Shown: positions 24,461 through 50,998, numbered from the stretch's first letter. The stretch is DNA of 64,000 nucleotides from Ramazzottius varieornatus (GCA_001949185.1 BDGG01000002.1:3593826-3657825); one strand, 5' to 3'. Translations and numbers: made by a program. Notes: a model not told the origin generated them from the sequence alone.

Positions 24461-24535
24461 NNNNNNNNNNNNNNNNNNNNNNNNNNNNNNNNNNNNNNNN
24501 NNNNNNNNNNNNNNNNNNNNNNNNNNNNNNNNNNN
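24461..24535. other. Assembly gap (75 N)
   Basis: Run of N; the same MITE start lies on both sides. Confidence 0.99.
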
Positions 24536-29138: not shown

Positions 29139-32100
29139 ATGCACCTGACAGGGTATATGGTGGTCAGTTTCGGTTTGAGTCTTTCTCTCCTGGCTGGTCT
29201 CTCAGCTTCCCTACAGTGTCAAGCGTTTTGCCGGAAAGACCAGGCTCAGAACTTTAGGCAGTTTCGTAACGATACCATCATAACTTTCTGTCAGTTGTGG
29301 GAAGACAAGGACGCCTTGATCGACCCAGCCATCGAACTGGGCATTCAGAGCCTACGGGATTCTTTCCCGCCCAACGTCCATTTCGAATGGATCAAGATGG
29401 AACTTCCGGGTGGCTGTTCCAACTCTGACGAAACGTAAGGTTATTTTATCTGTTGGGGCGGAGGTGCTAACGAGTTTGTCGAGCGGGAGTTGTGTCTTTC
29501 TAGGTCTTTGCTGATTTCGCCAGCTGCAGTGGAACTGAACGTGCGGAAAAGCTCGTTTGGCTGTTCAGTCTTCATGGGACCAGCGTGTACGGCTTCGGTC
29601 GAACAAATTCGGGGTCTGCTGAGCTCGTGGAATATCCCCGTGCTAACCACCGAGGCTGGAGGGATTACGGGGAACCAAAAGGCTGCCAGCAAGCTTTTGA
29701 CCAGGCTGGGTTTCAACCAAGAAGCCGTTGGTCTGTTCCTTGTCAAAGTCCTCGAGTATTTCTCATGGACCAACATCGTGATTGTAAGCTCCTCCTTTGC
29801 TTGATTGCAAAGTTTTGATGCCTGACAAAACAGCCGATTAGTAACATTACCCGAACGCTGCAGATCACGTACTTGCATACAGAGTAGGCTGAGCCCACCA
29901 TATGACGGAAGTAGGCAGGTGCATGCTGGCTTAGCTCGCTCTTGTTTATCCCGCTAACTCCTCAGCTCTTGATTTCTTTGACTCTAACAATCACTTCGTT
30001 GAGAGGGGTTTTTGTAATTTAGCGTTTTATTACAGATTTTTGACAGTGATGCTGCGTCGACAGCCTTCGCCAACAGCTTTGAGATAGTGTTACGGGACTT
30101 GACCGGAAGTAGCGTGGACCCGGGTTCCAGGATGCTGCCGATCTCATCGGGAGCAACAGCGACGGATTATAGAGGTCTATTGTCCCGAGTACGACTCACC
30201 GCCAGAGGCACGGCTTCCTTTCTTCTGGACGAGTCTTGTAGTCTTTCTCCTCCATCAGATATTTTCAACGTGACACCGTGACTTGCATGAATGGCTAATT
30301 ATACTGTTTTCCAGTGGTCGTTATCGCGGCGTTGTCCGATATCGCTCGTGACATAATGGTAGGTCCAAGAAAGGCTGAAATATCTTTGCCGAAATTTTAC
30401 TACTATTCTTGTCGGAAATTATAGGTGACTGCTGGAGATATGGGCATGACCAGCGGAGACTACGTAAGCTCAGCTGACCGGAACCTCCTGAAGAAGACAC
30501 ACGGCTCGTTATGGAAATGCGAAAGCAGTTCAGCTCTGTTCTCGTCTAGGTATACATTACGACGGATCTTTTTTACACTAACGGACGGACTGGTTCCATC
30601 ACTTTCAAGGCAACGACAGACGTAGGTATCAATATTCGTCCACAGAACGAAGCATCGCTGCAAGGTAACCTTTCCAAAGAAGCAGCCGACACCAATGCGG
30701 TAAAGAAGTCTCTCAAACAATCCTGGTATGGTCTCCCAGTGTAACATGATTACTACAGGATGTGAAGGCTGCTTTCCAAAGTCTCTTTATTATGACTTTA
30801 AAAGTCCCTGACACCAGAGCGAACGCCGAGTATCAGACCCGAATCAAAAAGCTGTCCGCCGAGAAATATCACTACATCTACGACGCAGCCGACAAGGTCG
30901 GGGGATGGGTACACATACTTTCCTAGAAAGCCTTGCGCTATGATCGTGAAGGTTTCCATGTGAGATTAAGGTCTTGGTTGCAGGTACCATATTCCGTCAC
31001 GGGTTTCTTCGACGCCTGTCGTCTGTACGGACTGGTGAGGTCGCCTCCTATAACCAGGTCGACCGCATGCAAAGAACTTCTCTGACAAAAGGTTTTGTTT
31101 CAGGTGCTGAACGAAACTCTGAAAGCCGAACAAGATCCACTCGATGGTCTGGCAATGACTCGAAAGATGTGGGGTCGAGTGTTTCCCGGCCTAGGAGCCG
31201 AGGTTGTCATCAGCGAGAATGGCGATCGCGTGTTCGACTTTTACCTGCTGGGTTTCGATCCACACATAGCGGCATTCACTGTATGGAATCTGCTAAAATT
31301 TTCTCAAGGTGATCCAGGTTCAAGCTCTTCCTTTTGCAGCCCGTGCTGGACTTCACTGCCTCGACCCGGAAAGTAAGCCTGGTTAGGGATATTTTCTGGG
31401 CGAACCGCCAAGGTCCTCCGCCCAACACGCCACCTTGCGGCTATGACGGCAAGAGTGGAGTGTGCGCTCGTGCTGCCACCACCGGTGTGCTGTCGGCTGG
31501 TGCTATCGCTGCCATCGTGGTCGGTGGAGCTTTGGGCTTGATGGTGTTCATGGTGCTCATTGCAAGGTAAGTATCTAGTGTTAAGAAGAAGAATACAATC
31601 ATGTCCGTCTGAGAACTTTCTCTTGGATTGAAATTTTAGACAGCGAAAAAAGGGCTGTGCGAGAGACAACGAAAACTGGTGGCGGATTGATTGGTTAAAC
31701 ATTACGGGTACGTACCAGACTCGAAACCTCAAATCTGTACTGGTACCAACTTTGTTATCTTGTTTATAGCGTTGAAAGATGCTCGCTCGGAATATCTTTC
31801 GTTCCATAGTAGCGGTAGTTCGTTACAACGAGTTACCTTTGCTGTCGGCACCGCTGGCGCAGCCCCAGAAATTGCAATACAGGCGCCGAGTCAAGATGAA
31901 ATGCACAGTGCACCGCGGGTGAGAGCAAATTCTCCCTCCCCCAGTCGTCATCTTGCAGTGCTGAAACGTCTGAAAACTCGACGGTCTTTGCAGCTGCCAT
32001 CGAATTCGGTCGGCCAACTAACGGCTCTTAAAATCCCCTCATCGCATTCTAGCAATACTATGCCTGAGTCAAAGCGAGTGCGAGAAGCTGCCGCATCGTA

Positions 32101-34831
32101 TGTCTCCCGCCATACGCGAACTAGCAATGGTGCCCGAACACTTAACAGTAGCATGCAGGCCACGTACATTGAAACAGGCATGTACCTGGACACCCAGGTC
32201 GCCGTCAAGCGTGTGGGAAAGGCCGTCTATCTCAGCCGAGCTATTCTCCACGACCTCCGTCTGGTAAGAGCCACTGCCCTTAGCACCATAGGTAATAATT
32301 GGACACCGATGCATTGGCGGTCGCTTTAGCTAAGAGATATAAATCACGACAACGTGAATCGCTTCGTCGGACTCTGTACCGAAGCAGGTAACGAGAGCAT
32401 CATTGCCGAGTACTGCAGTAAAGGAAGTCTGGGAAATTTACTGGACAATGATGCGGTCAACTTGGACGAGACCTTTCGTTTCTCCCTGATGAATGATATC
32501 ATTCAGGTATGCAATGCACAGTAGTATTGTTGCAAAGTCGCTGAAATAGTGGCTGAAAGCTGGCTTTACTAGGGAATGTGTTACATACACTCGTCGCCGT
32601 TTCACTCCCACGGTCGGCTGAACAGTTCGAACTGCCTGGTCGACGGCCGTATGTTGGTCCAGATTGCCGACCTGGGTCTGTGGCCACTTCGTCGTCGCTA
32701 CCTGGCCTTCCTCGATCCGGAGGCTGAGGAAGCGGAAATCCGTCCTCTGCTGTGGGTCGCACCTGAACACTTGCGCGAACCCATGCCGGTCAACGGTACA
32801 CCCAAAGGCGACGTGTACGGTTTCGCAATCATTCTCCAGGAGATCGTCTCTCGGTTACCGCCGTACCACGACAACGCCTCCGATACTCGCAGTAAGGAAT
32901 ATACAGTACGAAACAATTCGCCCAGATATCCACACTTTTCCAGGAAAGCCTCGAGAGTTTTGTACGAAATAGAATAGATCGTAGAGCAAGAGTCTGATCT
33001 CCTGTTCCCGACCTCCAATTATAAACTCTCGTAACCCAAAGATTCGACAGATTTTATGAAACATGCTTATGCATCTCCTCATGGTACTTGGACACTACCT
33101 TACGTTTTCAGCTGTCATTCGGGAAGTTAGGAAGGGTCTGAATCCGCCCTATCGACCAGTAGTCGAGAGTGGATCCTGCAACCTCCACGTTCTCACGGTG
33201 ATGCAAGAATGTTGGTCAGAGTTTCCGGAAGAACGCCCGTCATTCGAACTGGTCAGAAGCCGAACACGGCTGCTGATCAAGGACTTTTCGGGTAATCTCA
33301 TGGACAACTTGCTGAAGCGTATGGAGAAGTATTCGAGTGACCTCGAAGAACTGGTTGAGGAGCGCACCGCCGCCTTCATGGAGGAGAAGAAGAAGTCCGA
33401 GGAACTACTTGGCCAGATGCTCCCTAAGTAAGATCAGTCTTCACCGGCAAATTTCACCGTGAAACAGATATCTCCATCATTGCACTGGTTCATACTTTTC
33501 GCTTTCAGAGCTGTTGCAGAGAAGCTAAAGCGGGGAGAGTACATCGAAGCCGAAACATTCATCAGTGTTACCATATGTTTCAGGTAGGTTCGCCCCTGCG
33601 CGCCTGTGGCTTTTGCTGCATGTTAACCGGTACAGCCCTGATAAGGTTCTTGATGGTTGGATACTTGATTTCAGCAACGTCATGGACTTCGCAGAGCTGT
33701 CCGCCAAATCTTCGCCCCTGGAAATCGTCAACCTGCTCAACGGACTCTACAGTAAGCTATGTCCTCCAGAAGCTCAATGTGTGCGAGACACCATCGAATT
33801 CGAGTACGCACGTTCCCATACTTTCCGCTGTTTTACGTCTGATGAAAATGCAGGTCTGATGGAAGGTATTATCAACGAGCACGACGCTTTCAAGGTGGAG
33901 ACCATCGGAGAGTCCTGCGTGGTAAGCCTCGATTTTCTGTGAACTTCAGTTGTTTTTGGAGTACCATTTAACTGCATAGTTCGGTCGCTATTCCATCTGT
34001 ATGGCATTATGTACTCTACTACAGGTTGTCAGTGGATTGCCGATTCGCAATGGTACACGCCATGCGGTGGAACTCGCTAAAATCTCTCTAAAGATTATGC
34101 GAGCTATGGACCGCTACCACGTTCCACATCGTCCCGGAGAACGGCTGCTGCTCCGCTTTGGCATGCATACCGGACCGGCGGCTGCTGGTTGGCCATCGGC
34201 AAAAGTTTCGGCTAATCCCAATGCTAATTTACCTTGCTTGTCGGAATCTTTTAGGTGTCGTGGGACTGAAAATGCCGCGTTACTGCATGTAAGAATATTA
34301 TGAAGTTAACAGTTCGCGGTACCGTGGTTGCTTCTCAAAACATGTTGCTCGATCTCCAGATTCGGGGACACCGTCAACACTGCCAGCCGTATGGAGTCGA
34401 ATGGAGAAGGTGCGTTGCGTTAATGTTAATCTTTTACCCCATTGGGACTTGACGGAAACGTGGCCTTACTTCGCACAGTACCGTTCTCACTAATGTAAAG
34501 GTTGATGAATTGTGGTCATTTGCTGGGAAAGGGTGGTTCTTCCTTGCAGCCACACGCATTCACATCAGCCAAGCCACAAAGGTGCTGCTCGATCAATATC
34601 CAGAATTCATCGTTCACCTGCGCGGTAACATGGATATTAAGGTACTACACCCTCAGGGTTTCGTCAGCATTCTGTACAAAGGTGTTTGAAATACCAGTGA
34701 TGGTTCACGTTATTCGCGTGACGCATTGTGTAACGTGATCTCTCTCCGCACAGGGCAAAGGAAGCATGACCACGTACTGGCTGGTAGATTGGGTGGCTCA
34801 GGTCGCGACGACCTATGGATCGAGCTTGTAA
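29139..34831 (+). CDS. Receptor guanylyl cyclase 1 (signal peptide, ANF-receptor-type ECD, TM, kinase-homology domain, cyclase); beta-like half site
   Basis: PPPNTPPCGYDG hinge, [64 protein letters not shown]; cyclase FSNVMDF / ETIGESCV / MPRYCIFGDTVNTASRMES / KGKGSMTTYW. Confidence 0.93.
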
Positions 34832-36601
34832 TCACACAAGTAGAAAATATTCGAATTTCATTCCTGGTTCAAGAAGTTTCAGTCCAAACCTTCGTTTTAT
34901 CCTAGCATGAGAACAATCTGAAGCGGTGAGAGAAGCTGGGTGTGTTCCTTGCACGTACCAGAACCGCTCAACGAACGTTCGTGTCACGGTATTCGTGGGA
35001 TTTCCGAAGCCACACTTCGGGGCTGTATGTGCTGTAAATGGCTTTTCTAATCCAACATATCCAAGACACCAGTTCGTGCTGTACAAATAAATCAAGAGTT
35101 CCGTTTTGGCTAATTAACACTCCATTCTTTGTCTTTTGGGATTGAAAATCCGGATTAATACCGGCGATTGGTTACACGTGTTTTCCTTCAATGCTCTGCT
35201 AATTACTATGTACCTATGTACGCATCCCCCACTTGATTGCCGTGGAGCCGGAGTTTAATTCTTAGGTGTGCAGTCAAGTTCCTCTTGAATCTCTATCTCA
35301 GTTCCTTCAAGACGTCCCGTCATAATCAATGTAACAATCTTGGTAGCTTTTGTTCGGTCTGGAAAAAGTGAGGCGACTCACAAAACAATAATTTCCGAAG
35401 GTATTGATTAGGGACTGAATCAGATGGTTGGTCATTATGGCTACACTGCAGGATGCGATGATAAACAATCAAGGTGCTGCGTGTATCTCTTTTCCAGTAT
35501 CCAACATTCATCCACCCACGAGGCATCGTGGATATCGAACGCTTCACATGGTGGTGCAAACATTTCCAAAATGTTCTGATTGACCTTTTACCCTTGCTGA
35601 CGCAATCGACTCGATCGGTTCCTGCCTTCCTGGATTTTCATGGATTACGGCAAAAGGGAGGAAAAATCTGACGGGAACTGGGTCATTTCAGCAAGGCGCC
35701 GGGACCTTCAAACCGGGCACGGGTATCAGCAGCCATAGCAGGTACACCGGCTGTAGTGTACCACAGTCTGATCAGCAAAGTTGATACCGTTTTTTCTGTT
35801 GCTCGTCCCCGCCCAGTTTTTTCAACTCGGACTATTCCCTTACAGTCAGTAAACAACCAGCTTTGTTTCCCTACGTGTTGGAAAAGGATCCGACAAAATC
35901 CAAGTTTGGGAGAAAACCCCAACTATAATTCAGACCTATGACGCTGGTTATAAAACAGAACGCGGTATCTTGAGCAGCAGGTTTGTCAATTCCCACTCCT
36001 CCGGTAAATGCATAAAGAGTTTGCGTCTTCATTTAACAAATTACGGAACCACGTGTTTTGTGCACGGTTTGAGCCACTGGATCAAAACTTACCGACGAGT
36101 TTTTAACTGATGGAATCACAGGGGCTGGTACTCGATCGACCAACGACGGCAAGAAAGGTGGAGCTAATGTGCGCGATATGATCCGAGCAAGCTCCGTCTT
36201 TGTGCACCGGTCTGATTTCTTCCCATGGACAGGCCAACACCGCCACCTCAAATCCGACCAGCCCACTCGACGGACACTATGTTCCTGTATCTACGCAGTT
36301 TTTGACAGTGGAATCTGCACTCTATCAAAAAACAAAAGTTTTAAGAGCAAACACCACCCCCTGAATTTTGAATTTTCACTGGTTTTCCGCTGGTCTGACC
36401 TGTAGCCACATAGCCTCGCCGCGCCGACAAGGGTTTCGTGGAGACAAAAGAGAAAACGCCGCGCTGATTTGACCAAAATGAAACCCGCAGTAGGTCTTCA
36501 GTATCATGTTCGGGTCAATTTTGACTCAGTGGTTCCGTAAGTGTTAAGTTGAAGGAACAATCTGAAAGGAACAGCACTGAAAATTTAGGCTTCAAATGGT
36601 T

Positions 36602-36648
36602 GTTTTTCCGGTTTTTCCGGTTTGTCCGGTTTGTCCGGTTTTTCCGGT
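36602..36648. repeat. 9-bp tandem repeat (CCGGTTTKT)n
   Basis: About five units visible in intergenic DNA. Confidence 0.8.
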
Positions 36649-37923
36649 GAATCTTCCCCTTCCGAAAAAGCTTGGGTGTGCTTTTCTCGACGGTATTCCG
36701 AAGAGTCTTGGTAGTGGCATTTGCGCACATACACTGTTTAACAGACCGCGGTTTTGTCTGTCTTTTGATGTCACGGTGTCTCTAAGGAAAACGAACCGGA
36801 TGCTCAGCGAATTTTCACTGAAAAGCTGATCAGTGCTTAGGCAGTTTCCGATCGGCGTTTTCGCCCACCCGGGCTTTGTTCTGGCCTACTGAGTTTTTGT
36901 AAAACGAATTTCCGGAGTTAGAATGAGCTTCGTACAGATTCCACGTCCTGGAAGGAGTACTGAGCCGACGAGAAGAACTGTGGAAAACAGTGTCAACTTT
37001 GCCGAATCGGACTGGGTTTCTTCTACGTAGTACGAGTACATTAGTATTTAATCTGCTTGTCGGATATTTCAAAAATACTATACTCGCAGAAAGTTCATTA
37101 TTAAACGAGGCTTAATGGACCTTGCTCGCAGTAATACGCACCGGACTCTTCAAGTTTTCAATGGGTTGTTTTGTATTGCAATCTCTTTTCTCACTGCATT
37201 ACACGTACTTCGCCAAATTATGGGCAGGACAAAATTTCGGGCACCGGCCGAGAGCGGCAGGTTTTCGATCTATTGGTCAGCTTTAGCTGACCCTTGCCGC
37301 TTTCGGGCAGTGCCAAAAGTTTGTCCATGCTCATGATTAGGCAAAGTACGTGTATATATAAGTGATTTCTGGAATGCTCACCGTCATCGCCGGGTGAAAA
37401 TCAAACCGTTCCACGCTTCCCGAAACCTTTGGCGTAAACATCGCGTCATCCGGGCTCTGCCACGCCTTGTTCCATCGTACCGAACTATATATACTGTAGT
37501 TCGGCACACTTTACTCAGCAGTAACAAAAGGGAACGACCTAAGGCCAGATCGGTAATATCCGAGTATTCAACCGCTGATGTCGACACCTTGCTCTCTCTT
37601 GATGAAATAGGACCTGCTCCGCCCTGGCACATTTCGAATAATTAATTTTCCCAGCATTTTGTATGTAGTATACGTTGTTAACGATGCGCCGCACAACAAC
37701 AAGGCAGATGACTGGGCGTATCGCATTTCCGCAAATCAGCTCCTGGTTAACTTATGACGTCAACTATATCCTTAAGTCATTAAAACCCTCCTAGCTACCG
37801 ATAATGGTATAAATCCAGTTCGGCATCTTTCCTGACATGTGAACATTCTTCCAGAGCTTTTCAACCGTTAGTCTAGCTCTTGATGATAATTTTTCACCGA
37901 AATCGCAGATCTTCTAGTGGGAC

Positions 37924-38502
37924 ATGACGGCTATGGTGGTTTGCAATATGATATGGTGGGTGACCCTACATCAGTCGGTTTGCCTCCCGATGCCATCGAC
38001 TGGGTTGCCAATATCCTATCCGCTAACAAAATCAACAGCATTCCCCGTGCATCAGTTAAGTCATGCTACTTCGGACTTGGATTTGCCTGGCGAACGACCC
38101 GACAACAACGTTGAGCTCAAGCTCGGTCGGATGGGTAGTTCGAGTCTGCCCAGTGAAAGCGATTCGCCCTTTCGGTTCTTGGATAGGAAGAAGCGACAGA
38201 TTTCTCTGCATTTAAAAGAACCCACCCCGGATTCGGACGCTCTGGGATACAGCGCACCTTATCGCTTTCTTGAAGCTGACAACGGTCGCAAAATCCCACA
38301 TCCCTCGCCACCACCCTCCCGAACGACCAGGCACTGGAGTACGGGCTACACGACTAGCCATTTTCACCGCAGAGGAAACTCGGGAAAGGCCGATTTAGAT
38401 ACACCATATCGCTTTCTCGACCTCCGAAAACGAAACACAACTTTCAAACTCCCGAGCGTCAATCTTACCCACTTAACGCGCGGATCTCCGGATTTTGTTT
38501 AA
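37924..38502 (+). CDS. Putative neuropeptide precursor (single exon, 192 aa)
   Basis: Signal-like N-terminus; three copies of [STA]P[FY]RFL[DE] followed by RKKR, (ADN)GRK and (L)RKR. Confidence 0.72.
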   Translation: MTAMVVCNMIWWVTLHQSVCLPMPSTGLPISYPLTKSTAFPVHQLSHATSDLDLPGERPDNNVELKLGRMGSSSLPSESDSPFRFLDRKKRQISLHLKEPTPDSDALGYSAPYRFLEADNGRKIPHPSPPPSRTTRHWSTGYTTSHFHRRGNSGKADLDTPYRFLDLRKRNTTFKLPSVNLTHLTRGSPDFV

Positions 38503-38594
38503 CAATGATATTATTATGGCTCATGCATTCGTAAAGCCTGCAACATAACACACGCCTTGTATGCTGTAATGCAGAAACTGATGTATGCAGTGTA

Positions 38595-39210: not shown

Positions 39211-39264
39211 TACTGAGAAAGATTTTAGGCATGCTTATTTTATGTTGTGCACTAGTAAAATCGT

Positions 39265-40296
39265 TCAAAATCTTGATCCTGTATGACCTCCAGTGGCACG
39301 TGACCCTCGGCTTCCCTCTGAGACCGGCACTCTGAGTCCAAAGAGCTTTTTGATAGAGTTAAAGATATCCTTGTTCCCGATATTGAACAGAACCGGATTG
39401 ACGGCGGACAAGGAGTATCCCAGCCAGTAGGCCACATCAATGTACAGCTCTGATGATTCATAATGGAAAAGGTGCATCCGAATTAGGTAAACGATCCAGG
39501 GCATCCACAGCGCCACCTGCGCGATCACCAACAACGTCAGTACCCAAAAAGCTTGGCGCTCTTGACGCTTCCTATTTCGCGAGACTTGTCGAGTGGGGGC
39601 AGCAGCTGGCTCAGGATGCGTAATATTAATACCCCTCTTGTAAATGGTGACCAGCGTAAGTACGTAGCAGGTAACAACGATGGGTGTCGGCAGCCACCCG
39701 TCCATAACCGATACTGGAAATGATGAGGCGAAAACAGGAAGACCGTCATGTTCCCATGAGCAGCTTCGTTCCTTCTCGGTCAACCACCCAAAGGTCATCC
39801 GCGTATGGATGAAACCGGGTAAAATGGTAGCGTTGACAATCAGCCAACTGAGTACAATACCAATCAAGGCTTTTAACCTGTTGTTATATTCGCGATATGA
39901 GACTGGCCAATGAGCAGCCCATAATCGGTCGAAAGATACGATAACCAAGGTCCATACGCTGACGTTCGTGACTGTGTAGTCAAAGTACATGTAGAATGAG
40001 CACGACGCTGTACTCAGCGGCCAGTATTTATAGTATTCGTATACAATGGAGCACGGAATGCAAATTGCCCCTACCAAGAAGTCGGAGATCGCCATGTTCA
40101 GTAGGAGATAGTTGAAAGGATTACGAACTCGTTTTTCACGTATAAACGTTACGATAACGAGAAGGTTTGCTACGATGGTGAAAATGCACAGAAGAACGAG
40201 AAGCAGCACTACCCACCAAGCTGTTGGTACCATTAGAGTCCACCATTCTGGTGAAGTCGCATTTTCCGACGAGCTTGAAAAGGAAGCATTCATCAT
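39265..40296 (-). CDS. Aminergic-type (muscarinic/histamine-like) rhodopsin GPCR, intronless
   Basis: ANLLVIVTF, NMAISDFLVG, YWPL, TM3 Asp (FDY), SFDRLW, LWMPW, WLGYSLSAVNPVL. Confidence 0.93.
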   Translation of the reverse strand: MMNASFSSSSENATSPEWWTLMVPTAWWVVLLLVLLCIFTIVANLLVIVTFIREKRVRNPFNYLLLNMAISDFLVGAICIPCSIVYEYYKYWPLSTASCSFYMYFDYTVTNVSVWTLVIVSFDRLWAAHWPVSYREYNNRLKALIGIVLSWLIVNATILPGFIHTRMTFGWLTEKERSCSWEHDGLPVFASSFPVSVMDGWLPTPIVVTCYVLTLVTIYKRGINITHPEPAAAPTRQVSRNRKRQERQAFWVLTLLVIAQVALWMPWIVYLIRMHLFHYESSELYIDVAYWLGYSLSAVNPVLFNIGNKDIFNSIKKLFGLRVPVSEGSRGSRATGGHTGSRF

Positions 40297-40752: not shown

Positions 40753-41760
40753 TTAGCTTCGAATTCCTTGGTCACCTGGATCGGCGGGAGCGAGATATCT
40801 CGTCATTCGTGTTCCACGGCTCTCAGCGGCTACTCTTTGACGCGCTCGCAATCCGAATACTCTTCTGACTGCGTGGCAGATGTCCCTGTTCCCAATCATC
40901 AGTAGTATAGGGTTGACGGCTGACAGCGAATACCCCAACCAATACGCTACTGTGACGTAGACTTCCGACGTTTCATATTGCAGAAGATGCTTCCGCATCA
41001 GGTAGGCCATCCAGGGCATCCACAGCGCCACCTGCGCAACCACCAGCAATGTCAGCACCAAGAAGGCTTGGCGCTCTTGCCGACGTCGGTTGCTCGCATT
41101 GTGTCGAGTGGGACCGGCTGGCATTGGCTGCGCAAAATAACCTATCTTATGAACTTTGATCACAATGACCATGTAGCAGACTAGAACGATTGGTGTCGGT
41201 AGCCAACCGTTGATAACGGATGTGGGAAATGATGAGGCCAAACTCGACAGGCCGTCATGCTCCCATGCACAGCGTTTTTCTTTCTCAGTTAGCCATCCAA
41301 AAATTATCCGTGTGTAAATGTAACCAGGTAAAACAGTGGCGTTAACGGCCAGCCAGCTTAGCAGGACACCGATCAACGCTTTGGAGATCTTGTTATGCCG
41401 GTGATAGGTGGTCGGCCACTGGACAGCCCAGAAGCGGTCAACCGCAATGACGACTAGTGTCCAGACGCTGACGTTCGCCGCTGTGTAATCAAAGTACATG
41501 TAGAAGGAGCAGATGGTTTCGTTCAATGGCCAGTACTGGTAATATTCGTATATCAAGGAAAAGGGCATGCACACTGCTCCGACCAGGAAGTCCGAAGACG
41601 CCATGTTTAGTAGTAAGAGATTGAATGGCTTTCGGAGTCGAGCTTCACGGAGAAGAGTGACAATAACAAGGAAGTTGAGCACGCTCGTAAGGGTGCTCAA
41701 GATAATGAGGGACAACCACCAGTGTGAAGGCTTCAACGTGACCCACCACTCTCTTAGCAC
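40753..41760 (-). CDS. Tandem paralogue of the aminergic-type GPCR; true start unresolved
   Basis: Same motifs and high similarity to 39265-40296; frame stays open upstream to about 41880 without an ATG. Confidence 0.88.
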   Translation of the reverse strand: MLREWWVTLKPSHWWLSLIILSTLTSVLNFLVIVTLLREARLRKPFNLLLLNMASSDFLVGAVCMPFSLIYEYYQYWPLNETICSFYMYFDYTAANVSVWTLVVIAVDRFWAVQWPTTYHRHNKISKALIGVLLSWLAVNATVLPGYIYTRIIFGWLTEKEKRCAWEHDGLSSLASSFPTSVINGWLPTPIVLVCYMVIVIKVHKIGYFAQPMPAGPTRHNASNRRRQERQAFLVLTLLVVAQVALWMPWMAYLMRKHLLQYETSEVYVTVAYWLGYSLSAVNPILLMIGNRDICHAVRRVFGLRARQRVAAESRGTRMTRYLAPADPGDQGIRS

Positions 41761-42731
41761 AGGATTCCTGGTCGAGTTGAAGGTCGCGTTCTGGTCGCAG
41801 AGAACGCGGAGATATTCCTGTCCATTTTCCAGGTTGGGTTCTTCAACGCAAAAGCATGAAATTTCGATGTTTCATGCAGTGTTCATCAGGAAGACTGACT
41901 GCTTGAATCCCAAAATGCCGTTCCATCCAAAGTGACGATGGGCATTTCCTCACAACAAAGATTTGCATTGATTGGAGTCAGTGTTTGCAGTCTTGGGTTA
42001 TTTCCTAAAGATTCCCATCAGATGTACCGGTAATGAGAATAGTCACGAAAAGCGCACTAGTCTGTCAGCATCGAAGCAGGAGCTCATTACAACGCCGGTA
42101 ACTTTAGACCCACACCTGTAAGCTTATACAGTAAGATTCAGATTTCCTCGAGCCGTTCAGGGATAAATTGGATGGAAGCATCCGGATCTTATATGTTAGC
42201 CGGTTGCTATTTCCTAGCTGGGTGGTATACCCCGAACAACTGATACCAAATCCTAAGATTTCCGTCAGATCGTTCCTCGAACCACGGTAGTCCTGTGTGT
42301 GCGATGGAATGTCTGCTGTTTCCTGAGGCCGTCGATGCAACGTCCACGAAGAGCCCAGTACATGAACGTTAACCTGGAATAAAACTAGACGCGACTGAAG
42401 TGCTGTGCAGGTACTATAACGAACTTTCAGCTCATTAGACGGGTACCGGCCGGGTGTCGTGTTGTGATAAGGAATTCATAACGGACTCCTTTACGAGGAA
42501 CACGCTACTGGGTGACATTTTATCTGTAATTGATTTATTCTCACAAACAGAGCTAGCTTTCCCCCGACTGTCATGAACGAAAGTTGCTGCGACCATAGCG
42601 CTTCACTCTCAGTACATCGGCATTTTCAGGAGGGACTGTTCTGATCACGATGACTTTATAATTTGATGATTGGGACGTGGGCAAATGGATGGGACCAGAT
42701 CGTTCAAGTGGCGCTACTTAGCGCTCTCTGG

Positions 42732-44200
42732 TCATTCTTTACGCAGTTCCACCGAAGTTAACACCGCTTCCTTGAACTCCTTACGCTTGACATGCGCGCG
42801 GATGATATCGAAGTACACTTGGCGCGTCTTCTGGTCGTACTTATTCAGACGTAACTTGAAACAGAAACTCTTTCCGACTGATACAAGGGACGTCGTCAAA
42901 TGGACTGAACCAGATCGTTTCCCACAAGTGATGCACATCTCTATGCTTATCGGTTGGAAGAGCGCGCCACTTCCGTTCAAGTCATTTGCCGACATCTGAC
43001 CGCGAAGGATGGAACTGGAACTTACTCGACAGAAGGAATGACCTGCTTCAACCAAGGAATGTACTCAGGAGACGCGTTCTGCTTAAACGCCTTCATCCAT
43101 TCGCAGTCAGCCAAGCAGTCTTTGCCCAGCAGAAGGTTGTTCGAACGAAGCAGTTCAGTACCTCGTTGAACTTGGTCGCGAAGGACCTTGAATTCGGGCA
43201 GGATTTTCTGGCATGATATAAAGGCCCCGTTAACGAACTGCATACCGCCCTCGCGCTCGTCCCACCATTCGCTCATCTCATCGATGAGCACCTTGGCCTT
43301 TTTTTACCGCTAACTGTTGTTGGTACCGCAAGCCGGACTTGGCTTGTTCGCGCGGTCGTCGTACGGAATAGGCCGGGTACAGTTCCCGTTCGTACACCTC
43401 AACGCGCACTGCTCCGCTCCCTTAAACAAAATTACACGGGCAAACTCAGATACAAGCAGAAAAACTTCGGTTTATTCTTCAAAGACTTTAAAACTGGTTG
43501 CACACTCGAGACTTACGAGGGCCGGATCCCAGCATGACCTGCAGGTACAAGTGATCCAAAAAGCGCCGCCCGGATTCACCATTTGGATCAGAGAGCGTTT
43601 CATATCGACGAGTAAGCGAATGAAGGCGCTATCCGTAACACCTTTCTCCGTTTCTCTCTGGAAAAAAATCAACAGGCTAGATAATCGGTTAAATATCCCA
43701 GTCCTGGCTATATCAACGGGTAAGATATACTTGATGGATAAGGGTTACCGCGAGATGAGCGATGGCCGCGAACACCAGAGCAGTGGTCTCTTCTTGAAGT
43801 GCAGGTCCGGAGGCGACGATTTTGTGCGAGAGAATCTTGCATTCAATGTTGTGGCGATCCTTCCAGTCCTCGACCTGGGACAGAAGAAAAAGTCTACCAA
43901 TACTGGATGAGCGACAAAGATGGGGTAAAAACTAAAAACTAGTTGAAATACAGTATACCTGGCGTTCTTTGGAGCAGTAATGGGCGTACTAACATCCTGA
44001 GCAGCGCTTGACTTCTTTCGGTTGGGGATTCACGACACAGCGGTAGCAGTACTGGTCGGCGAAGGCAGGCGCAATAGACCATACGTACGGGGAGTATTGG
44101 CAGATATGGATCCTTCTTTGAAGACGATGTGTGGATCGTTCGACTGCTCCGGCTTCGCTTCCGGTGAGGCTTGCTTAGTCCTAATCCAGCAGCGTGAAAC
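42732..44200 (-). pseudogene. MYND zinc-finger (SMYD-like N-terminus) gene, apparently disabled
   Basis: PYVWSI..YCYRC..KRCSGC*YAHYCSKERQ|VEDWKDRHNIECKIL: in-frame TAG at 43989-43991, Cys-to-Arg in the finger, probable frameshift near 44105; downstream GT-AG exons run to a stop at 42732. Confidence 0.7.
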
Positions 44201-45672
44201 TCATGACGGACACAGGAGATCGATAACCGTCCTAGTCTTTAGACTCCAGCAAATCTACACGGACGAAATGCTTGATGGACAGGTTCGGCCGATTCTTGAA
44301 TTCGGATTTCTGGCCAAAATCAAGCGTCGGAGGTCAAAGTTTTCGAGGTCTCTCCACAAGGCCGTGCTGAAACCGCCAACTCTTGATATGAGCAGTGGGC
44401 AGAGCTGGTTTGAGAATTATGGAGCGGTAACGAAACAAGAAATTTCTTTTTGATTGACCAATCGAAATTGTCGATGCTGGAGACGCTGTGCTCTCATTGG
44501 TCGTCTGCATTCACTCAATAATTTCATGCCCCGCTCCATATGATGTCATCTGGCCACGCCCCACTGCTCATATACATAAGGGGTTCAACCGTCGTCCGTC
44601 AACTCCAACAAGTTTTAAAGCTGATTTTATTACAAATTACTGGTCGCCACACCGAAAAGCCGTGCTATGGCATTGGCTTCGAAGGACTTGCTTTGCTCAT
44701 GCAAGGCTTGCACGGACCCGACTTTCCTAAGTGCCTTTTAACTCTTTCAGCACCACATGTTTTGAGTTCGACTTGAGCCATGGGGTACAAACGATTCCAC
44801 AATTTTAACTGGTTAGAAGGAACGGGTGGGGCTGGAACTGGCTAATGACACGGAAAGGGCCAACTCGCGTCGCTTGATCGGACAGTTGCGTCTTGCTCTT
44901 CGAAAGTCCCTTTTCTGCGATCAGCAAAGCGTACGTGTCAGTTAAATCACGACCCTTGTGACTGCGCACGTTTCTCCACTTCCATGTTTATCTGGGGAGA
45001 AATCGACCGTTTGGCATAAATCAAAAAAGTACTCAGAGGTCAAGCGAGAAAAACACATCTGCTAGAACTGTGATTCACTAAGCATCTTTGGTTCGGCGTA
45101 TCGGCGACATATTTCCTTCACCACGTGAAAAAGTATTTCGTCCAGGCAAAGCAAGAAATGGCATCGAATTCGTTGGAAACGGAGCCCGCATCCCAGCAAG
45201 AACTGTGGCTCTGGGATCGTTTGCACCCCATGGTACTGCAAGTGTTAAGATACCGGTACTTGGACGAGTTTTCTAAAGTGACCTTTAGGCTATAGAGTTT
45301 CGCAGGTACAGTATATCCGAACTCGACGTAAGGCTAGTTTTACTCCGTGGTTCTCAAGCCTTTCCTCCCCTTTTGACGACATTGAACTTTTGCACACCGC
45401 CACTCTAACTCGCGCAGATGAGGTGTTTTCGAAAATAAAATTGGTTCATCAAGAAAATGGCAGTAGCACTGGTTTAGAGCGATTACTCCTCTTGCAAAAC
45501 TAGCCCAGTTTGACTCCAGAAAGAACTCTCTGCAATTTCGATCAGCTGTAATCGACGCTAATCTGTGGCTGATGTCAGTCCCCAGGAAGCAAAAGGTGGG
45601 GCGCAAACGTCAGGAATAAAAGATGATTCCCTCGTCCCCGCAAACCCTGCAGTGACTCAGTCTTCGGAGAGC

Positions 45673-48600
45673 ATGGCTTCACGAATATTCTGTTTGCACA
45701 TGTTGACCTTGGCGGCCACCTTTGTTGCCGTATTCTCGTTGAGTATTTCTCAGCAGAAATTGGCCGAACAATGTGGGGACACCTGTTCAGCAATGGCCAG
45801 ACGAGCACAACAGTCCGAGCAACTGAGACGCCCGCTGGTCTCCTTCTGCCAGCTATGGGAAGACTCTGACAGCTTGATCGACCCAGCCATCGATCTGGGT
45901 CTTCGAACTCTGCGGGAAGATTTCTCCGATGCAGTGGACTTCGAATGGGTTAAGGCTGTCGTGCCGGGTGGTTGTACGGACGAGACCTTTATGCGTTCGT
46001 CGCCGGAAGCTGTGGACCTGCAGATGGTCAAGTCTGTCAACGGATGCAGCGTCTTCATGGGACCCAGTAAGTTCTTTGTAGAAAACTTTCAGTCCCACAA
46101 GGCCCCAAGCTAAAATGTTGAAGCGCAGCACGTGACACTGGAAATAAAACAGTTCGCCAAAAATAACCTATACATCTCGAGAAACTCGGTCGTATTTTGT
46201 ACGCTTGGGAAAATGGATGACCAAAGCGAAGAAAGGGAAACCTTGAGATAATTACGATTGAGATGTTTTGTTACGTTTGTTGTGCTGCAGGCTGTAGTGG
46301 CGCAGTTGAACAAATTCGTGGGTTGATTAACTACTGGAATGTTCCGCTGATCACAACCGGTGCTTCCTCGTTGTCCACGGCGCAGATGGTCGGCAGCAAG
46401 AGGATCACCCGGCTGGGTTTCACCCAGGACGCGGTGATGGGGGTACTCACGACCACTTTCCAGACTTTCGGCTGGACGAATGTAGCCTTGGTACGTACGA
46501 GCAAGACATCCCACACGCCTTCCAGTATCTAATACCACGCGATAGCCACCGTTTTTTGCATTACAGATTCACGGTGACGACACGGCATCGCTTGGCTTTC
46601 ACAAAGCCTTCGAGTTTAGCATGCAGCAAGGACAAAAGGGCGGACCGACGGATGCGTCCGGCGTGTCTTCTCGAATATTTTCCCTTCCCCTAAGCCAAGC
46701 TCCCGATGATATCAAGAAAGTCCTGACCCAGACAAACAACACCGCCAGAGGTAATGGCCAGATTTGCCGCTCTTCTGGTACGTTTTCCATACCAGATAAA
46801 CTTAGCCGTAAAATATCGATGATCACTTGGTTTGCAGTGATCATAATTACTGCTCCGGCAAATGTAACGCGGGATGTGATGGTAAGTGTATGCACTAATG
46901 ACTGGAATTTTCAATCAGCAATCACCGTCTTGCTGTGTTTGAATGGTAATTCTTGAATGTCTTTCCATTTTAGCTGGCAGCTTATGATTTGGGGATGACG
47001 AATGGAGATTATGTACGGTCTGGTACTAGTAATTTTGATTTTTTTCCCCCCCCCCCGCCACTACTTACCATATAATTACAATTTGGAGCGACACCTCCAC
47101 CGTTATCAATTACCTGTGCGAACTCTCGCACCCCAGCGCCACCTGCATCCCTGCACTTTTGCAGGTGTACTTTGCCGTTGATTTGTACCATGCTAGCGGA
47201 CAAGCGGGGTCGATGTCGTGGACATCGGCTGGTCGGAAAACGGCGGAAGATCTGGTAGGTAGCGACTCGCTAAAACTCAGCGGATTTCTGAAGTCGGATG
47301 ATGCTGGTCGCGAGGTATTTCTTTTCTCGAGCAATTACCCTTGGTCCGTCCCTGGGCTCCCTGGAAGTCAGATTCTGCACACACAGGCAAACGAACTTTC
47401 TATGGTATACCTTGCAGGAAATAAAAAATGCCTTCCGCTCACTGTTCCTGGTTCAGCTGAAAATGCCCGATAACCCAGAGTACTTGCGCTACCAACAAGA
47501 CCTCAAAGACTTGTCTTCTTCCAAATACAAGATCACATTCGGGAAAGATGAAAAGGTATCAGTTACGTGAAAGCCATCTTGGCCCTTGTTGTCAGTATTT
47601 ATTCGAAGGTGCAGGTTCCGCCGTCCGTTATGGGCTTTTTTGACGCTTGTCGTGTCTACGGACTGGCGCTAAACGAAAGCCTACGTGCCCACCAAAGCCC
47701 AAACGATGGGTTAGCCATGACGCAGCGCATCTGGAATCGGACATTCCATGGCGTCGGCATCGACATCGCCATCAGTCCCAAGGGCGATCGAATGTACGAT
47801 TTTTTCCTACTCTCCTTCGATGTGGCCAGCGGTCAGTTTCTGGTTAGTTCTTTCATTCGCTTCGAGCATTCGTGCAACATTTCCACTGAAATCTTTTGCT
47901 TGACATTGAACGGGTAATTTTAGCCGGTGTTGCAATACGTGGCTGTGAACAACTCACTGCAGCAACTTCGAGCCATCAACTGGGTGGGCGGTCGAGGTCC
48001 TCCCTCCAACATGCCTCGTTGTGGCTTCGATGGGAAATATGGACCGTGTCGCGAGCAGATCTCAGCAGGTCAGAAAGATCACTGGACATTAATACAGCAT
48101 GACGGTCGCCCAGATGTTTCATTGTTTTTTTCCCAGGTCTCGCGTTGGAAGGACTGGTCGCAATCATCGTCGTCGCCGTACTGGCCATGTTCGGCGTTGC
48201 AGCCTGGCTCCTGTACATGTGAGTTTGATACTGCCCTGAACAGTTCGTTGCTATTTGTCGTTGTCTTTTACAGAAAATGGTACAAGCCCAATATCTCCGC
48301 CAATGACGAGTGGTGGCAAGTGGAGTGGGAAGATTTGACGGACTTCCGGGAAACCAACAAGTCGTCGTCAGTGGGTTCAAGTATAACTAACAACCATCGT
48401 CGCAGCCCAGCTCTGCACGTAAGTTCTAGCTTTGACAAGTGTTTTTGGCTCAGGGTGGTTAGATTCGTGCATTGACAGCCTCCGAGTACGACAAAACCGG
48501 CAATTATAGCCCAACGCTCTGTTGGGTCGCGATCAACAGGGGGATCGCGGAAGTCGCGCATCTATATCGAAAACGCGATGTACAAGGATGTGCCGGTTGC

Positions 48601-50998
48601 CATCAAGCGCATTCCGGCTGGCATGAACCTAGCCCAAGCGGAGCTGCAAGTCCTGCGAGATGTATGTTAGTTCACTACACTTCCTTTGTGAATCATTGTG
48701 TCTGACCAAGGAGTATTTTTGCAGCTGAGAAACTTGATTCACGAACACATCGTACGCTTCATCGGCATGTGCCTGCAGCCCGAGCACGAGTGTCTGATTT
48801 ACGAATACTGCAAGAAGGGTAGCTTGTCGAACCTTCTCGAAAAAGACTCTGTTACGTTGGACTGGGCATTTCGCTATTCCATCATTAGCGAAATCGTTGA
48901 GGCAAATTTGATTTACCATCTGGGACGTGGCCTTCGGGACGTAGACTTGAACCAGCTCGTGATCTCGAGTGGCGCACGTATCCATTGTGAATGGCTCAGA
49001 TTATGCGCCACTTCGAAAAACTGATCTGTCCAGTTCAGGGCCACGTCCCATTCTGTCGACTGTGGGAATTACGAGGGAAGTTAACCTTCGTCCTTTTCTA
49101 CTTAGGGTATGATCTTTCTGCATTCCTCCAAGTTCAAATCCCATGGAAGGTTGTGCAGCCTGAACGTTTTGATCAACGGACGAATGGTAGCCAAGGTCGC
49201 CGACGTCGGGTTGTGGACTTTACGGAAGCCCTACCCGATATTCCTCGAAGCCGACCTGGTCGACGACGATCTTCGTCCGCTCTTGTGGGTGGCTCCCGAG
49301 CACCTGCGAGCACCCATCTCACCGTACGGCACACAAAAGGGCGACGTTTACAGTTTCGCCATCATCTTGCAAGAACTCATCCTCCGTAACGAGCCATACG
49401 ACAATGGAAGCAGCTGTGTGGACATAAGAGGTAGAGACGACGTCTTCCCTTACAAAAAGAAGCACGTTCATTGGACAAGTCGCAAGTGTTGTACGTGGAA
49501 CTTTTTCCCTCTGACCAATCATATGAAGAGGTGCTGTCGTTTCAGCGATCGTGAGGGAGGTGCGGAAGGGCGGACAACCTCTGATGCGTCCCTCAGTTCC
49601 CTACGACTCGTGTGATCCAACCTTGTACCGCTTGATGACGGACTGCTGGCAAGAGACTCCAGAAGAACGTCCCAGCTTTCTGCAGATACGATTTCGATTG
49701 AAGCCTTTGGTCAAGCATCACACTGGCAACTTGCTCGACAACATCGTCAAACGGATGGAGAAGTACACAAAGACGCTAGAGCAGGCAGTGGAAGAAAGAA
49801 CGGGAGCTTTCTTGGAAGAGAAGAAAAAGTCGGAAGAACTGCTGAACCAGCTGCTGCCCAGGTAAGCGTTTAACGGTATAAAACATCGGAGGCGTTTTGA
49901 CGCTGCTTCCACGTACGTAGACAAATCGCAGAGAAACTGCGGCAAGGAGTCCGACTGGAGCCAGAGACCTTCTCCAGCGTCACGATCTACCACAGGTACT
50001 GCTGCCAGTCTCGTTTTTAGCTAGCTCACATACCAGCGAACGGTGTCGGTATCTTCCTGTTGCAGCGACCTGGTAGGATTCACGTTGTTGAGCTCGAGCA
50101 GCACAGCCGTCGAGGTGGTCGACCTCTTGAATGACCTGTATTGTAAGAACTGTCAGAGTGACTGAATGATGTAAGACGCGTTGAAGGAAAATGCCTCTTT
50201 CACAGCGCTCTTTGACGGCATTATCGAGGGGTTCGATGCGTACAAGGTTGAAACTATCGGAGATGCTTACGTTGTAAGTACACGTCTGTCTTGCCGCATC
50301 AGCTTTTTTGAAAATGGCAATTTGTCACATTACTATGATGGATTCTACCATACATCTTGTGGTCCCATACTCGTACTAATAAATTGTTGTCCGTCTCTAC
50401 CACAGGTGGCAAGCGGTCTGCCGGAGCGAAATGGTCAGCTTCACGCTTACGAGCTGGCCGCCATGTCCATCAAAATTCTGAAAGCTTTACGCCGTTTTCG
50501 AATTCGTCACCGTCCAAACGAAAGCCTGCGAATGCGCATCGGACTTCATACCGGCGCGGCTACAGCCGGTGTAATCGGCCTCTTGATGCCTCGGTACTGT
50601 GTGTAAGTCCTCGTCATGTTTTCGCATGTTTGGATATTGGTAAGGCTGACAGTGTGAGCTGTAGGTTTGGAGAAACCGTTGTTCTGGCTCACAAGATGGA
50701 GACCCTGAGCGAACGTAAGCGTTCCGTAAATGCCGATGGCCCACCCTAATCCGCGCAAAGAATCCCGTTGGCAGTATTTGTTTTTCAGCCATGAGGATAC
50801 ATATGACGGCAGCAACCTACGAGCTTTTGCGTGACCGACACGAGCTGGTTATAGCACCACGTGGAGAAATCGTCGTACCGGTACGATTCATCAATGTGAA
50901 AACCCTCTCAATTGTTTGACATGTCGGATTAATTGATTTTCGTACAGGGTAAGGGCGTTATGAAAACCTACTGGTTGGACGGATCCGTAGGAGGTTGA
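45673..50998 (+). CDS. Receptor guanylyl cyclase 2 (paralogue of rGC1); alpha-like half site
   Basis: ECD motif FCQLWED.D.LIDPAI.LG shared with rGC1; [40 protein letters not shown]; cyclase HSDLVGFT / ETIGDAYVV / [19 protein letters not shown] / GKGVMKTYW. Confidence 0.93.

What the first reader, a model, noticed from the sequence alone, without database searches (positions are those of the whole stretch)
29139..50998. Two paralogous receptor guanylyl cyclases with complementary half-active sites: predicted obligate heterodimer
Seen: rGC1 reads FSNVMDF (AAC at 33676) and ETIGESCV (GAG at 33910), so both metal-binding Asp residues of the canonical FSDIVGF/ETIGDAY motifs are replaced, but it keeps FGDTVNTASRMES (N at 34376, R at 34388). 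rGC2 keeps both Asp residues (SDLVGFT at 50067; ETIGDAY at 50262) but reads [13 protein letters not shown] (N-to-V at 50681, R-to-K at 50693). No stops were noticed in the exons read, and the ectodomains are clearly paralogous. Established: class III cyclase active sites form at the dimer interface, with one subunit giving the two Asp residues and the other giving E/C/N/R. Soluble GC alpha (FGNNVTLANKFES) and beta (FSGIVGF) split the work this way, whereas vertebrate receptor GCs are homodimers; heterodimers have been proposed for some nematode receptor GCs. Inference: a local duplication partitioned the catalytic residues, converging on the alpha/beta layout (VLAHK vs TLANK). Each homodimer should be dead or weak and only the heterodimer active, giving a co-expression AND gate for cGMP signalling.
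Basis: partly seen in the sequence, partly recalled or inferred. Interest (0 to 1): 0.92.

Follow-up and report, generated by a model that had tools for sequence, protein, structure and literature searches.

The report
Tardigrade receptor cyclase pair, complementary half-sites
Two neighbouring sister genes of the tardigrade Ramazzottius varieornatus encode receptor guanylyl cyclases that have each lost the opposite half of the catalytic residues, so they probably make cGMP only as a mixed pair; this arrangement is already known from nematode ODR-1/DAF-11 and from soluble guanylyl cyclase.

Summary
rGC1 (29139-34831, 24 exons, 1167 aa) and rGC2 (45673-50998, 22 exons, 1121 aa) are open, full-architecture receptor guanylyl cyclases: ANF-receptor ectodomain, transmembrane helix, kinase-homology domain, coiled coil and cyclase. 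At the eight canonical class III positions, rGC1 lacks only the two metal Asp (N, E). rGC2 lacks only N, R and K (V, K, P). The split therefore matches soluble GC beta and alpha.

Spliced RNA contigs confirm 15 rGC1 junctions, including most of those in the cyclase domain. rGC2 is held by RNA-like runs. The two genes are each other's closest paralogs in the genome (support 0.97), and a canonical gene lies in the sister clade. This fits duplication followed by reciprocal loss.

The heterodimer itself is inferred and was not tested. Three points temper the claim:
- Obligate heterodimeric receptor GCs are already described in C. elegans (ODR-1/DAF-11).
- This genome holds at least 7 alpha-like and 8 beta-like receptor-type cyclase domains, so the partner is not fixed by sequence.
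- Three RNA runs hold rGC2 but no rGC1.

Other notes of this scan on the same genome flagged further half-site cyclases. I class this as a new member of a known kind, of moderate interest.

The parts
29139..34831 (+). rGC1 gene: 24 exons, 1167 aa, TAA stop at 34829-34831. This is the beta-like (C2-like) subunit.
   Evidence: The model was built from RNA joints plus my own spliced alignment, and the ORF is open. 15 junctions are listed as GT..AG joints in spliced contigs of run X4 (one further joint was not shown). Junctions at 29783/30036, 30207/30315 (predicted GC-AG), 30896/30984, 31034/31104, 31308/31374, 32263/32330, 33583/33675 and 34641/34754 are predicted only.
29139..31498 (+). rGC1 signal peptide and ANF-receptor ectodomain exons
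   Evidence: PF01094 hits on exons. 45% identity to the rGC2 ectodomain.
31499..31564 (+). rGC1 transmembrane helix
   Evidence: A 22-residue hydrophobic stretch in the exon 31374-31566.
31994..33427 (+). rGC1 kinase-homology domain and start of the coiled coil (4 exons)
   Evidence: PF07714 at 2e-12 and a faint HNOBA hit. Joints at 32506/32573, 32891/33112 and 33427/33509 are seen in RNA contigs.
33509..34831 (+). rGC1 cyclase domain, 8 exons: 33509-33583, 33675-33751, 33854-33921, 34025-34187, 34255-34288, 34360-34409, 34550-34641, 34754-34831
   Evidence: PF00211 hits. 305 bits against my cyclase HMM. Best solved relative is GC-A at 1.4e-12. Five of the seven internal junctions, and the junction into the first cyclase exon, are confirmed by RNA contigs, including the weak GTTGGC donor at 34188.
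33676..33678 (+). rGC1 position 1: metal Asp replaced by Asn (AAC)
   Evidence: It aligns with the Asp before IVGF of GC-A.
33910..33912 (+). rGC1 position 3: metal Asp replaced by Glu (GAG). The guanine-specifying Glu at 33898-33900 is kept.
   Evidence: This exon is fully covered by a spliced RNA contig with no differing letters.
34278..34286 (+). rGC1 positions 4 and 5: Arg (CGT at 34278) and Cys (TGC at 34284), both kept
34376..34390 (+). rGC1 positions 6 and 7: Asn (34376) and Arg (34388), both kept. Position 8 Lys is kept at 34639-34641.
45673..50998 (+). rGC2 gene: 22 exons, 1121 aa, TGA stop at 50996-50998. This is the alpha-like (C1-like) subunit.
   Evidence: Spliced alignment of the rGC1 protein to the DNA, all junctions GT-AG, ORF open. 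PF01094, PF07714 and PF00211 on exons. 8-45% of its sampled words are held by 20 runs (15 guessed to be RNA) of 4 named studies. The splice junctions are predicted and were not checked with reads.
48139..48216 (+). rGC2 transmembrane helix, on its own exon 48137-48218
   Evidence: Hydropathy 2.8 over 19 residues. Exon placed.
49921..50998 (+). rGC2 cyclase domain, 7 exons: 49921-49995, 50066-50142, 50206-50273, 50406-50602, 50665-50714, 50789-50880, 50948-50998
   Evidence: PF00211 at 6e-20. 296 bits against my cyclase HMM. Best solved relative is GC-A at 4e-23, against soluble GC alpha at 3e-9.
50067..50069 (+). rGC2 position 1: metal Asp kept (GAC). Position 3 Asp is kept at 50262-50264 and Glu at 50250-50252.
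50592..50600 (+). rGC2 positions 4 and 5: Arg (CGG at 50592) and Cys (TGT at 50598), both kept
50681..50695 (+). rGC2 positions 6 and 7: Asn replaced by Val (GTT at 50681) and Arg replaced by Lys (AAG at 50693)
50878..50880 (+). rGC2 position 8: the Lys before GKG is replaced by Pro (CCG)

Best explanation
rGC1 and rGC2 are sister receptor guanylyl cyclase genes of Ramazzottius varieornatus, created by a local duplication of a canonical, homodimer-competent ancestor. Afterwards each copy lost a different half of the composite class III active site. rGC2 keeps the residues that a C1/alpha-type subunit gives (two metal Asp and the phosphate Arg) and has lost N, R and K. rGC1 keeps the residues that a C2/beta-type subunit gives (E and C for guanine, N, R, K) and has lost both Asp. 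Shown here: intact ORFs, the full domain architecture, the residue states, sisterhood, and transcription with splicing of rGC1. Inferred: a mixed dimer, most likely rGC1 with rGC2, rebuilds one competent GTP site and one dead pseudo-site, as in soluble GC and membrane adenylyl cyclase. Also inferred: either homodimer lacks a complete site and is inactive or very weak. cGMP output would then need both subunits in the same membrane, each carrying its own, different ectodomain.
For: The residue states at all eight positions are reciprocal with no cross-type loss. The positions are those defined in PMC3591389. Both cyclase domains still score 296-305 bits on a cyclase HMM, within the range of canonical paralogs and well above doubly degenerate ones at 146-229 bits. 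Both ORFs are complete. rGC1 is spliced as modelled in RNA contigs, and rGC2 is held by RNA-like runs. The two are reciprocal best matches in the genome in the kinase-homology exon, at 126 bits. They are sisters at 0.97 on 410 columns, next to a clade that contains the canonical gene at L029. The coiled coil is the best conserved part between them, at 64% identity. As an internal control, the same census picks out the genome's soluble GC alpha/beta pair, which is also adjacent. An alpha-like receptor GC is conserved at 77% identity between R. varieornatus (L060) and Paramacrobiotus (P0048), so half-site receptors are maintained in tardigrades. There is precedent in ODR-1/DAF-11.
Against: There is no evidence of physical interaction or enzymatic activity. 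Runs X1-X3 hold 32-45% of the rGC2 words but give no rGC1 contig. Only X4 shows both genes, and rGC1 there has depth 1-6. The genome holds about 32 canonical domains and at least 15 other half-site receptor domains that could complement either gene. The rGC1 changes are conservative (D to N, D to E) and the rGC2 change R to K keeps the charge, so residual homodimer activity is not excluded. No orthologs from other tardigrades were recovered, so conservation of this particular pair is untested. One rGC1 junction needs a GC-AG intron that RNA does not confirm. The 15 differences between X4 contigs and the reference in rGC1 are 9 nonsynonymous and 6 synonymous, all outside the cyclase domain. That is only weak evidence of constraint, and the contigs are of low depth.
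Confidence: 0.5

Rival explanations
1. Both are half-site subunits but are not dedicated to each other. Each pairs with other receptor cyclases, canonical or half-site, in a promiscuous network, and their linkage only reflects their recent origin.
For: The census finds about 32 canonical, 7 alpha-like and at least 8 beta-like receptor-type domains. A canonical partner would complement either gene. rGC2 is present without detectable rGC1 in three RNA-like runs. The same clade holds further variants: L070 (DD|MK), L030 (DD|NK) and L033.
Against: They are the only linked alpha/beta receptor pair in the genome and are sisters. Their coiled coils are the most similar part of the two proteins. In the one other adjacent complementary pair, soluble GC alpha/beta, the neighbours are the partners.
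Confidence: 0.25
2. One or both are pseudo-cyclases with no catalytic role. They would act as ligand-binding, scaffolding or dominant-negative receptors.
For: This genome has other degenerate domains hit on both sides: L025, L026, L033 and L046. Earlier notes of this scan describe large families of cyclase-less ANF-type receptors in the genome. rGC1 has low RNA depth.
Against: Random decay should hit both residue classes. Here every loss in one gene is of one class, and every residue the partner would need is kept (p about 0.04). The HMM scores remain near canonical values.
Confidence: 0.15
3. Each homodimer keeps useful activity, because Asn/Glu in rGC1 still bind metal, or Lys in rGC2 replaces Arg. 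On this view the pattern has no functional meaning.
For: The substitutions D to N, D to E and R to K are chemically conservative.
Against: From established knowledge: in soluble GC the homodimers are inactive because these same residues are split between the subunits (PMC3591389). rGC2 has also lost N (to V) and K (to P).
Confidence: 0.08
4. One of the genes is a decaying pseudogene.
For: A predicted GC-AG donor at 30208 and weak donors in rGC1. The rGC2 junctions were not checked with reads.
Against: Both ORFs are complete over 22-24 exons. rGC1 is spliced in RNA and rGC2 words are held by RNA-like runs.
Confidence: 0.02

Closest known systems
C. elegans receptor guanylyl cyclases ODR-1 / DAF-11
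   Same: Both are receptor-type cyclases that lack complementary catalytic residues. The nematode pair is proposed to form an obligate heterodimer with a single active site, and is supported by chimera experiments (PMC5225109, PMC8045692).
   Different: Orthology was not tested because I had no nematode sequences in hand. The tardigrade pair sits in a tardigrade clade beside a canonical paralog, so an independent origin is likely. [quoted passage not shown]
Soluble guanylyl cyclase alpha1/beta1
   Same: The partition of the eight catalytic positions is the same: alpha gives D, D and R; beta gives E, C, N, R and K. Alpha carries T and K at the N and R positions, while rGC2 carries V and K. The genome's own soluble GC alpha/beta genes are also adjacent.
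   Different: rGC1 and rGC2 have an ectodomain, a transmembrane helix and a kinase-homology domain. Their closest solved relative is GC-A, not soluble GC. rGC1 has lost both Asp, whereas beta1 keeps the second.
Membrane adenylyl cyclase C1/C2 pseudo-heterodimer
   Same: One competent site and one degenerate site, formed by two diverged class III domains.
   Different: In adenylyl cyclase the two domains are in one polypeptide and specify adenine (K/D). Here they are two separate genes and specify guanine (E/C).
Vertebrate GC-A (NPR1) homodimer
   Same: The domain architecture is the same, and it is the best solved match for the cyclase exons.
   Different: GC-A has all eight residues in each chain and works as a homodimer.
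Other tardigrade half-site receptor cyclases (L060 / Paramacrobiotus XP_055350346.1; Hypsibius OQV15544.1)
   Same: These are receptor GCs with alpha-like (DD|QK, DD|AK) or beta-like (HD|NR) states.
   Different: They belong to different subfamilies and have no linked complementary partner.

Membership tests
Receptor (membrane) guanylyl cyclase | Extracellular ANF-receptor-type ligand-binding domain | tested here: met
   PF01094 hits on exons of both genes.
Receptor (membrane) guanylyl cyclase | Single transmembrane helix followed by a kinase-homology domain | tested here: met
   Hydrophobic helices at 31499-31564 and 48139-48216. PF07714 hits on both genes.
Receptor (membrane) guanylyl cyclase | C-terminal class III cyclase domain with guanine-specifying Glu and Cys | tested here: met
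   PF00211 hits on both genes. E and C are kept in both. GC-A is the best solved relative.
Canonical homodimeric receptor GC (GC-A type) | All eight catalytic residues present in each chain | tested here: not met
   rGC1 lacks both metal Asp. rGC2 lacks N, R and K.
Heterodimeric class III cyclase with one composite site (soluble GC-like layout) | One subunit keeps D, D and R and lacks N and R; the other keeps E, C, N, R and K and lacks the Asp | tested here: met
   rGC2 fits the first description and rGC1 the second, at all eight positions.
Heterodimeric class III cyclase with one composite site (soluble GC-like layout) | The two subunits are expressed together | tested here: inconclusive
   Run X4 holds both genes. 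Runs X1-X3 hold rGC2 words but give no rGC1 contig. These are whole-sample contigs with no cell resolution.
Heterodimeric class III cyclase with one composite site (soluble GC-like layout) | The subunits bind each other, and activity needs both | not testable with these tools
   This needs co-immunoprecipitation and cGMP assays. Complex prediction was not run because the spliced domains have no reference and any two class III domains are expected to dock.
Soluble guanylyl cyclase alpha/beta family | Closest relatives are soluble GC subunits, with no membrane receptor part | tested here: not met
   GC-A scores 4e-23 and 1.4e-12 on the two exons tested. Soluble GC reaches only 3e-9 on the rGC2 exon and is not found for rGC1. 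The ectodomain, transmembrane helix and kinase-homology domain are present.
ODR-1/DAF-11 orthologs | Orthology to the nematode genes | not tested
   No nematode sequences were retrieved. The placement beside a canonical tardigrade paralog argues for an independent origin.

The most novel reading that the evidence does not exclude
Tardigrades may run a combinatorial receptor-cyclase system built from alpha-like and beta-like half-site subunits. This genome has at least 7 alpha-like and at least 8 beta-like receptor-type domains, and at least one alpha-like receptor is conserved across tardigrade superfamilies. In such a system cGMP would be made only where two different receptors meet. rGC1/rGC2 would be the one pair caught in linkage: sister genes whose active site was split by reciprocal loss after tandem duplication. 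That would make them a natural example of how obligate heterodimeric receptors arise. The two GPCR genes nested between them might belong to the same sensory module.
Probability: 0.25. Interest if true: 0.7.

Novelty: new member of a known kind. Interest (0 to 1): 0.45.

Why it matters
If the pairing holds, this would be a second, probably independent, case of an obligate heterodimeric receptor guanylyl cyclase outside nematodes. Its history can be read unusually clearly: sister genes, still linked, a canonical gene in the sister clade, and every loss of one class only. It would be a textbook case of duplication followed by complementary degeneration acting inside a single active site. It would also give a tractable pair for testing how two different ectodomains control one catalytic centre. 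The wider census suggests that about a third of the cyclase domains in this tardigrade are half-sites. That makes combinatorial cGMP signalling in a large lineage-specific receptor expansion directly testable.

Tried and rejected
- Orthologs in other tardigrades were not recovered.
  - The profile search of the kinase-homology exon against representatives gave only short unnamed fragments at 55-69% identity (P0001-P0003, from ENA/Logan contigs). The best full-length hits were no closer than about 50%.
  - Two searches used alignments of window exons laid on a full-length scaffold. They returned only relatives of the scaffold.
  - This is a limit of the tools and is not evidence of absence.
Full genes of L029, L033, L015 and L030 could not be fetched, so the tree uses the kinase-homology C-lobe, coiled coil and cyclase only.
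- IQ-TREE with bootstraps first failed on a thread setting and then timed out. The support values are FastTree SH-like values.
- On the cyclase domain alone, the sister grouping was weak at 0.61.
- PDB searches with the 25-27 residue exons were too short to be useful.
- Descent from soluble GC was rejected. A pseudogene reading was rejected.
- The joined spliced models were built and used only inside the sandbox: for the ORF check, for the pairwise alignment, as queries for my own spliced aligner, and for a local BLAST against proteins already fetched. They were sent to no search, fold or complex tool. Structure and complex prediction of the spliced domains were therefore left out.
Full report
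**Organism and setting.** The window is G000:C2:3593826-3657825 of a 55.8 Mb assembly in 200 contigs. One representative protein, P0103, is encoded at my locus L078 on contig C17. It is GAV08190.1, RvY_17920 of Ramazzottius varieornatus, and it sits on a contig of 777,369 bases, the same length as C17. Introns are short, 48-252 bases in the two genes.

**Observation.**
- In rGC1 the codon for the first metal Asp is AAC (N, 33676) and that for the second is GAG (E, 33910). AAC (N, 34376) and CGT (R, 34388) are kept.
- In rGC2, GAC (50067) and GAT (50262) are kept. The N position is GTT (V, 50681) and the R position is AAG (K, 50693).
- rGC2 has also replaced the Lys before GKG with Pro (CCG, 50878).

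**Gene models.** Contigs of run X4 laid on 29000-34950 show 15 GT..AG joints in rGC1 (one further joint was not shown). These include the junction into the first cyclase exon (33427/33509) and five of the seven junctions inside the cyclase domain: 33751/33854, 33921/34025, 34187/34255 (weak GTTGGC donor), 34288/34360 and 34409/34550.
- I filled the remaining junctions with a small protein-to-genome aligner of my own, using each paralog as the guide for the other.
- rGC1 is 24 exons and 1167 aa, 29139-34831. rGC2 is 22 exons and 1121 aa, 45673-50998. Both are open from an ATG with a signal-peptide-like start to the stop.
- One rGC1 junction (30207/30315) needs a GC-AG intron and is not covered by RNA. 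The rGC2 junctions are all GT-AG but are predictions only.
- Pfam on single exons finds ANF_receptor, PK_Tyr_Ser-Thr and Guanylate_cyc in both genes. Each has one hydrophobic helix.
- Identity between the two proteins is 46% overall: 45% in the ectodomain, 50% in the kinase-homology domain, 64% in the coiled coil and 52% in the cyclase domain.
- The joined models were used only inside the sandbox and were sent to no search, fold or complex tool.

**The eight catalytic positions.** PMC3591389 defines eight positions in soluble GC. The alpha subunit gives D486, D530 and R574. The beta subunit gives E473, C541, N548, R552 and K593. The paper states that homodimers are inactive because these residues are split between the subunits. 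I built a cyclase HMM from 33 canonical receptor-GC domains and mapped the spliced domains onto it.
- rGC1 reads N E E R C N R K. It lacks only the two alpha-type Asp.
- rGC2 reads D E D R C V K P. It lacks only three beta-type residues.
- Nothing the partner would need is missing. If two and three losses fell at random on eight positions, a cleanly reciprocal result has a probability of about 0.04 (my calculation).
- Both domains still score 296-305 bits on the HMM. Doubly degenerate paralogs score 146-229 bits.
- Their best solved relative is GC-A (4e-23 and 1.4e-12), well ahead of soluble GC. The alpha/beta layout is therefore convergent.

**How common this is in the genome.** PF00211 matches about 80 loci in this genome. 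I fetched them and classified 78 after spliced alignment.

| Class | Loci | Notes |
|---|---|---|
| Canonical (DD\|NR) | 32 | |
| Both Asp kept, N and R both lost | 11 | 7 receptor-type, including rGC2; also the two adenylyl cyclase C1 domains and soluble GC alpha |
| An Asp lost, N and R kept | 17 | at least 8 receptor-type, including rGC1; also two adenylyl cyclase C2 domains and soluble GC beta |
| Only one of N or R lost | 7 | |
| Hit on both sides | 11 | |

- The control works. L057 and L058 lie 7 kb apart and are best matched by soluble GC alpha1 and beta1.
- The method aligns to a canonical consensus and so leans slightly towards canonical calls at exon edges. The counts are approximate.
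- Among representative receptor GCs of other animals, degenerate sites are rare, about 6 of 80.
- Two of those rare cases are tardigrade proteins: Paramacrobiotus XP_055350346.1 (DD|AK) and Hypsibius OQV15544.1 (HD|NR). The former is 77% identical to R. varieornatus L060 (DD|QK), so an alpha-like receptor has been kept across tardigrade superfamilies.
- Other first-stage notes of this scan flagged further half-site cyclases in this genome, which agrees with the census.

**History.** In the kinase-homology exon, rGC1 and rGC2 are reciprocal best matches in the genome at 126 bits and 56% identity. The genes at L033, L030 and L029 come next. In one ectodomain exon, rGC1 scores slightly better against the L029 and L033 genes than against rGC2.
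- A FastTree tree on 410 columns (kinase-homology C-lobe, coiled coil, cyclase) puts rGC1 and rGC2 together at 0.97. L029 (canonical) plus L033 form the sister clade at 0.94.
- The cyclase domain alone gave only 0.61 for the sister grouping.
- The simplest reading is a local duplication of a canonical gene followed by reciprocal loss.
- No other alpha-like and beta-like receptor loci are adjacent.
- The two genes are 10.8 kb apart and are not immediate neighbours. Two GPCR genes lie between them on the other strand.

**Expression.** Runs X1-X3 cover only the 3' end of the upstream ABC-transporter gene within the 5.95 kb that I laid, so they behave as RNA. They hold 32-45% of the rGC2 words but give no rGC1 contig. 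Run X4 holds 22% of the rGC2 words and gives spliced rGC1 contigs at depth 1-6. Contigs cannot rank expression, but this is no sign of tightly coupled abundance. The 15 differences between the X4 contigs and the reference in rGC1 are 6 synonymous and 9 nonsynonymous. None lies in the cyclase domain.

**What is known.** Reviews state that a number of C. elegans receptor GCs lack complementary residues. They describe ODR-1/DAF-11 as an obligate heterodimer in which each monomer gives essential catalytic residues, supported by chimera experiments. Formal proof in native cells is still awaited (PMC5225109, PMC8045692). I found no paper on this in tardigrades.

**Verdict.** The heterodimer is a well-founded inference that remains untested. 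The partner is not fixed by sequence in a genome with so many candidates. This is a new member of a known kind. Its main value is as an unusually legible origin story, and as the entry point to what looks like a widespread half-site receptor system in tardigrades.

**Limits.** No orthologs were recovered. No structure or complex was predicted.

Noticed in passing
window 39265-40296 (-) and 40753-41760 (-): Two single-exon rhodopsin-family GPCR genes (PF00001 at 4e-40 and 7e-42), 61% identical to each other. They lie on the opposite strand in the spacer between rGC1 and rGC2. In C. elegans, ODR-1/DAF-11 act downstream of GPCRs, so a functional link is conceivable but untested.
   Followed up: partly
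window 37924-38502 (+): A 192-aa ORF that another first-stage note flags as a candidate neuropeptide precursor. It has no Pfam family at E <= 0.01.
   Followed up: partly
window about 27000-28800 (+), 3' end to about 29190: The upstream gene has ABC-transporter-like exons (an LSGK-type signature and a Walker B region are seen in translation). Its 3' end is covered by RNA-like contigs at depth 10-50 in all four runs laid.
   Followed up: no
G000:C6:1514451-1515138 and 1521242-1521873 (L057, L058): The soluble guanylyl cyclase alpha-like and beta-like genes of this genome are adjacent, about 7 kb apart on the same strand. They are best matched by solved soluble GC alpha1 and beta1.
   Followed up: partly
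G000:C2:1930443 and 1940012 (L025, L026); G000:C2:8683753 (L033): Receptor-type cyclase domains degenerate on both sides of the active site (SD|TV twice in tandem, and PD|GK). They are candidates for true pseudo-cyclases.
   Followed up: no
G000:C8:465217-465595 (L060) and protein P0048: An alpha-like receptor cyclase (DD|QK) with a 77% identical alpha-like ortholog (DD|AK) in Paramacrobiotus metropolitanus. Seven of the nine GC-type alpha-like domains carry Lys at the Arg position, as soluble GC alpha does.
   Followed up: partly
window 24461-24535: A run of 75 N, either an assembly gap or a withheld stretch.
   Followed up: no
window 31035-31103, 34188-34254 versus 48069-48136: Intron positions differ between the paralogs. 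rGC1 has extra introns in the ectodomain and in the cyclase domain, and rGC2 has one before the transmembrane exon. There has been intron gain or loss since the duplication.
   Followed up: no
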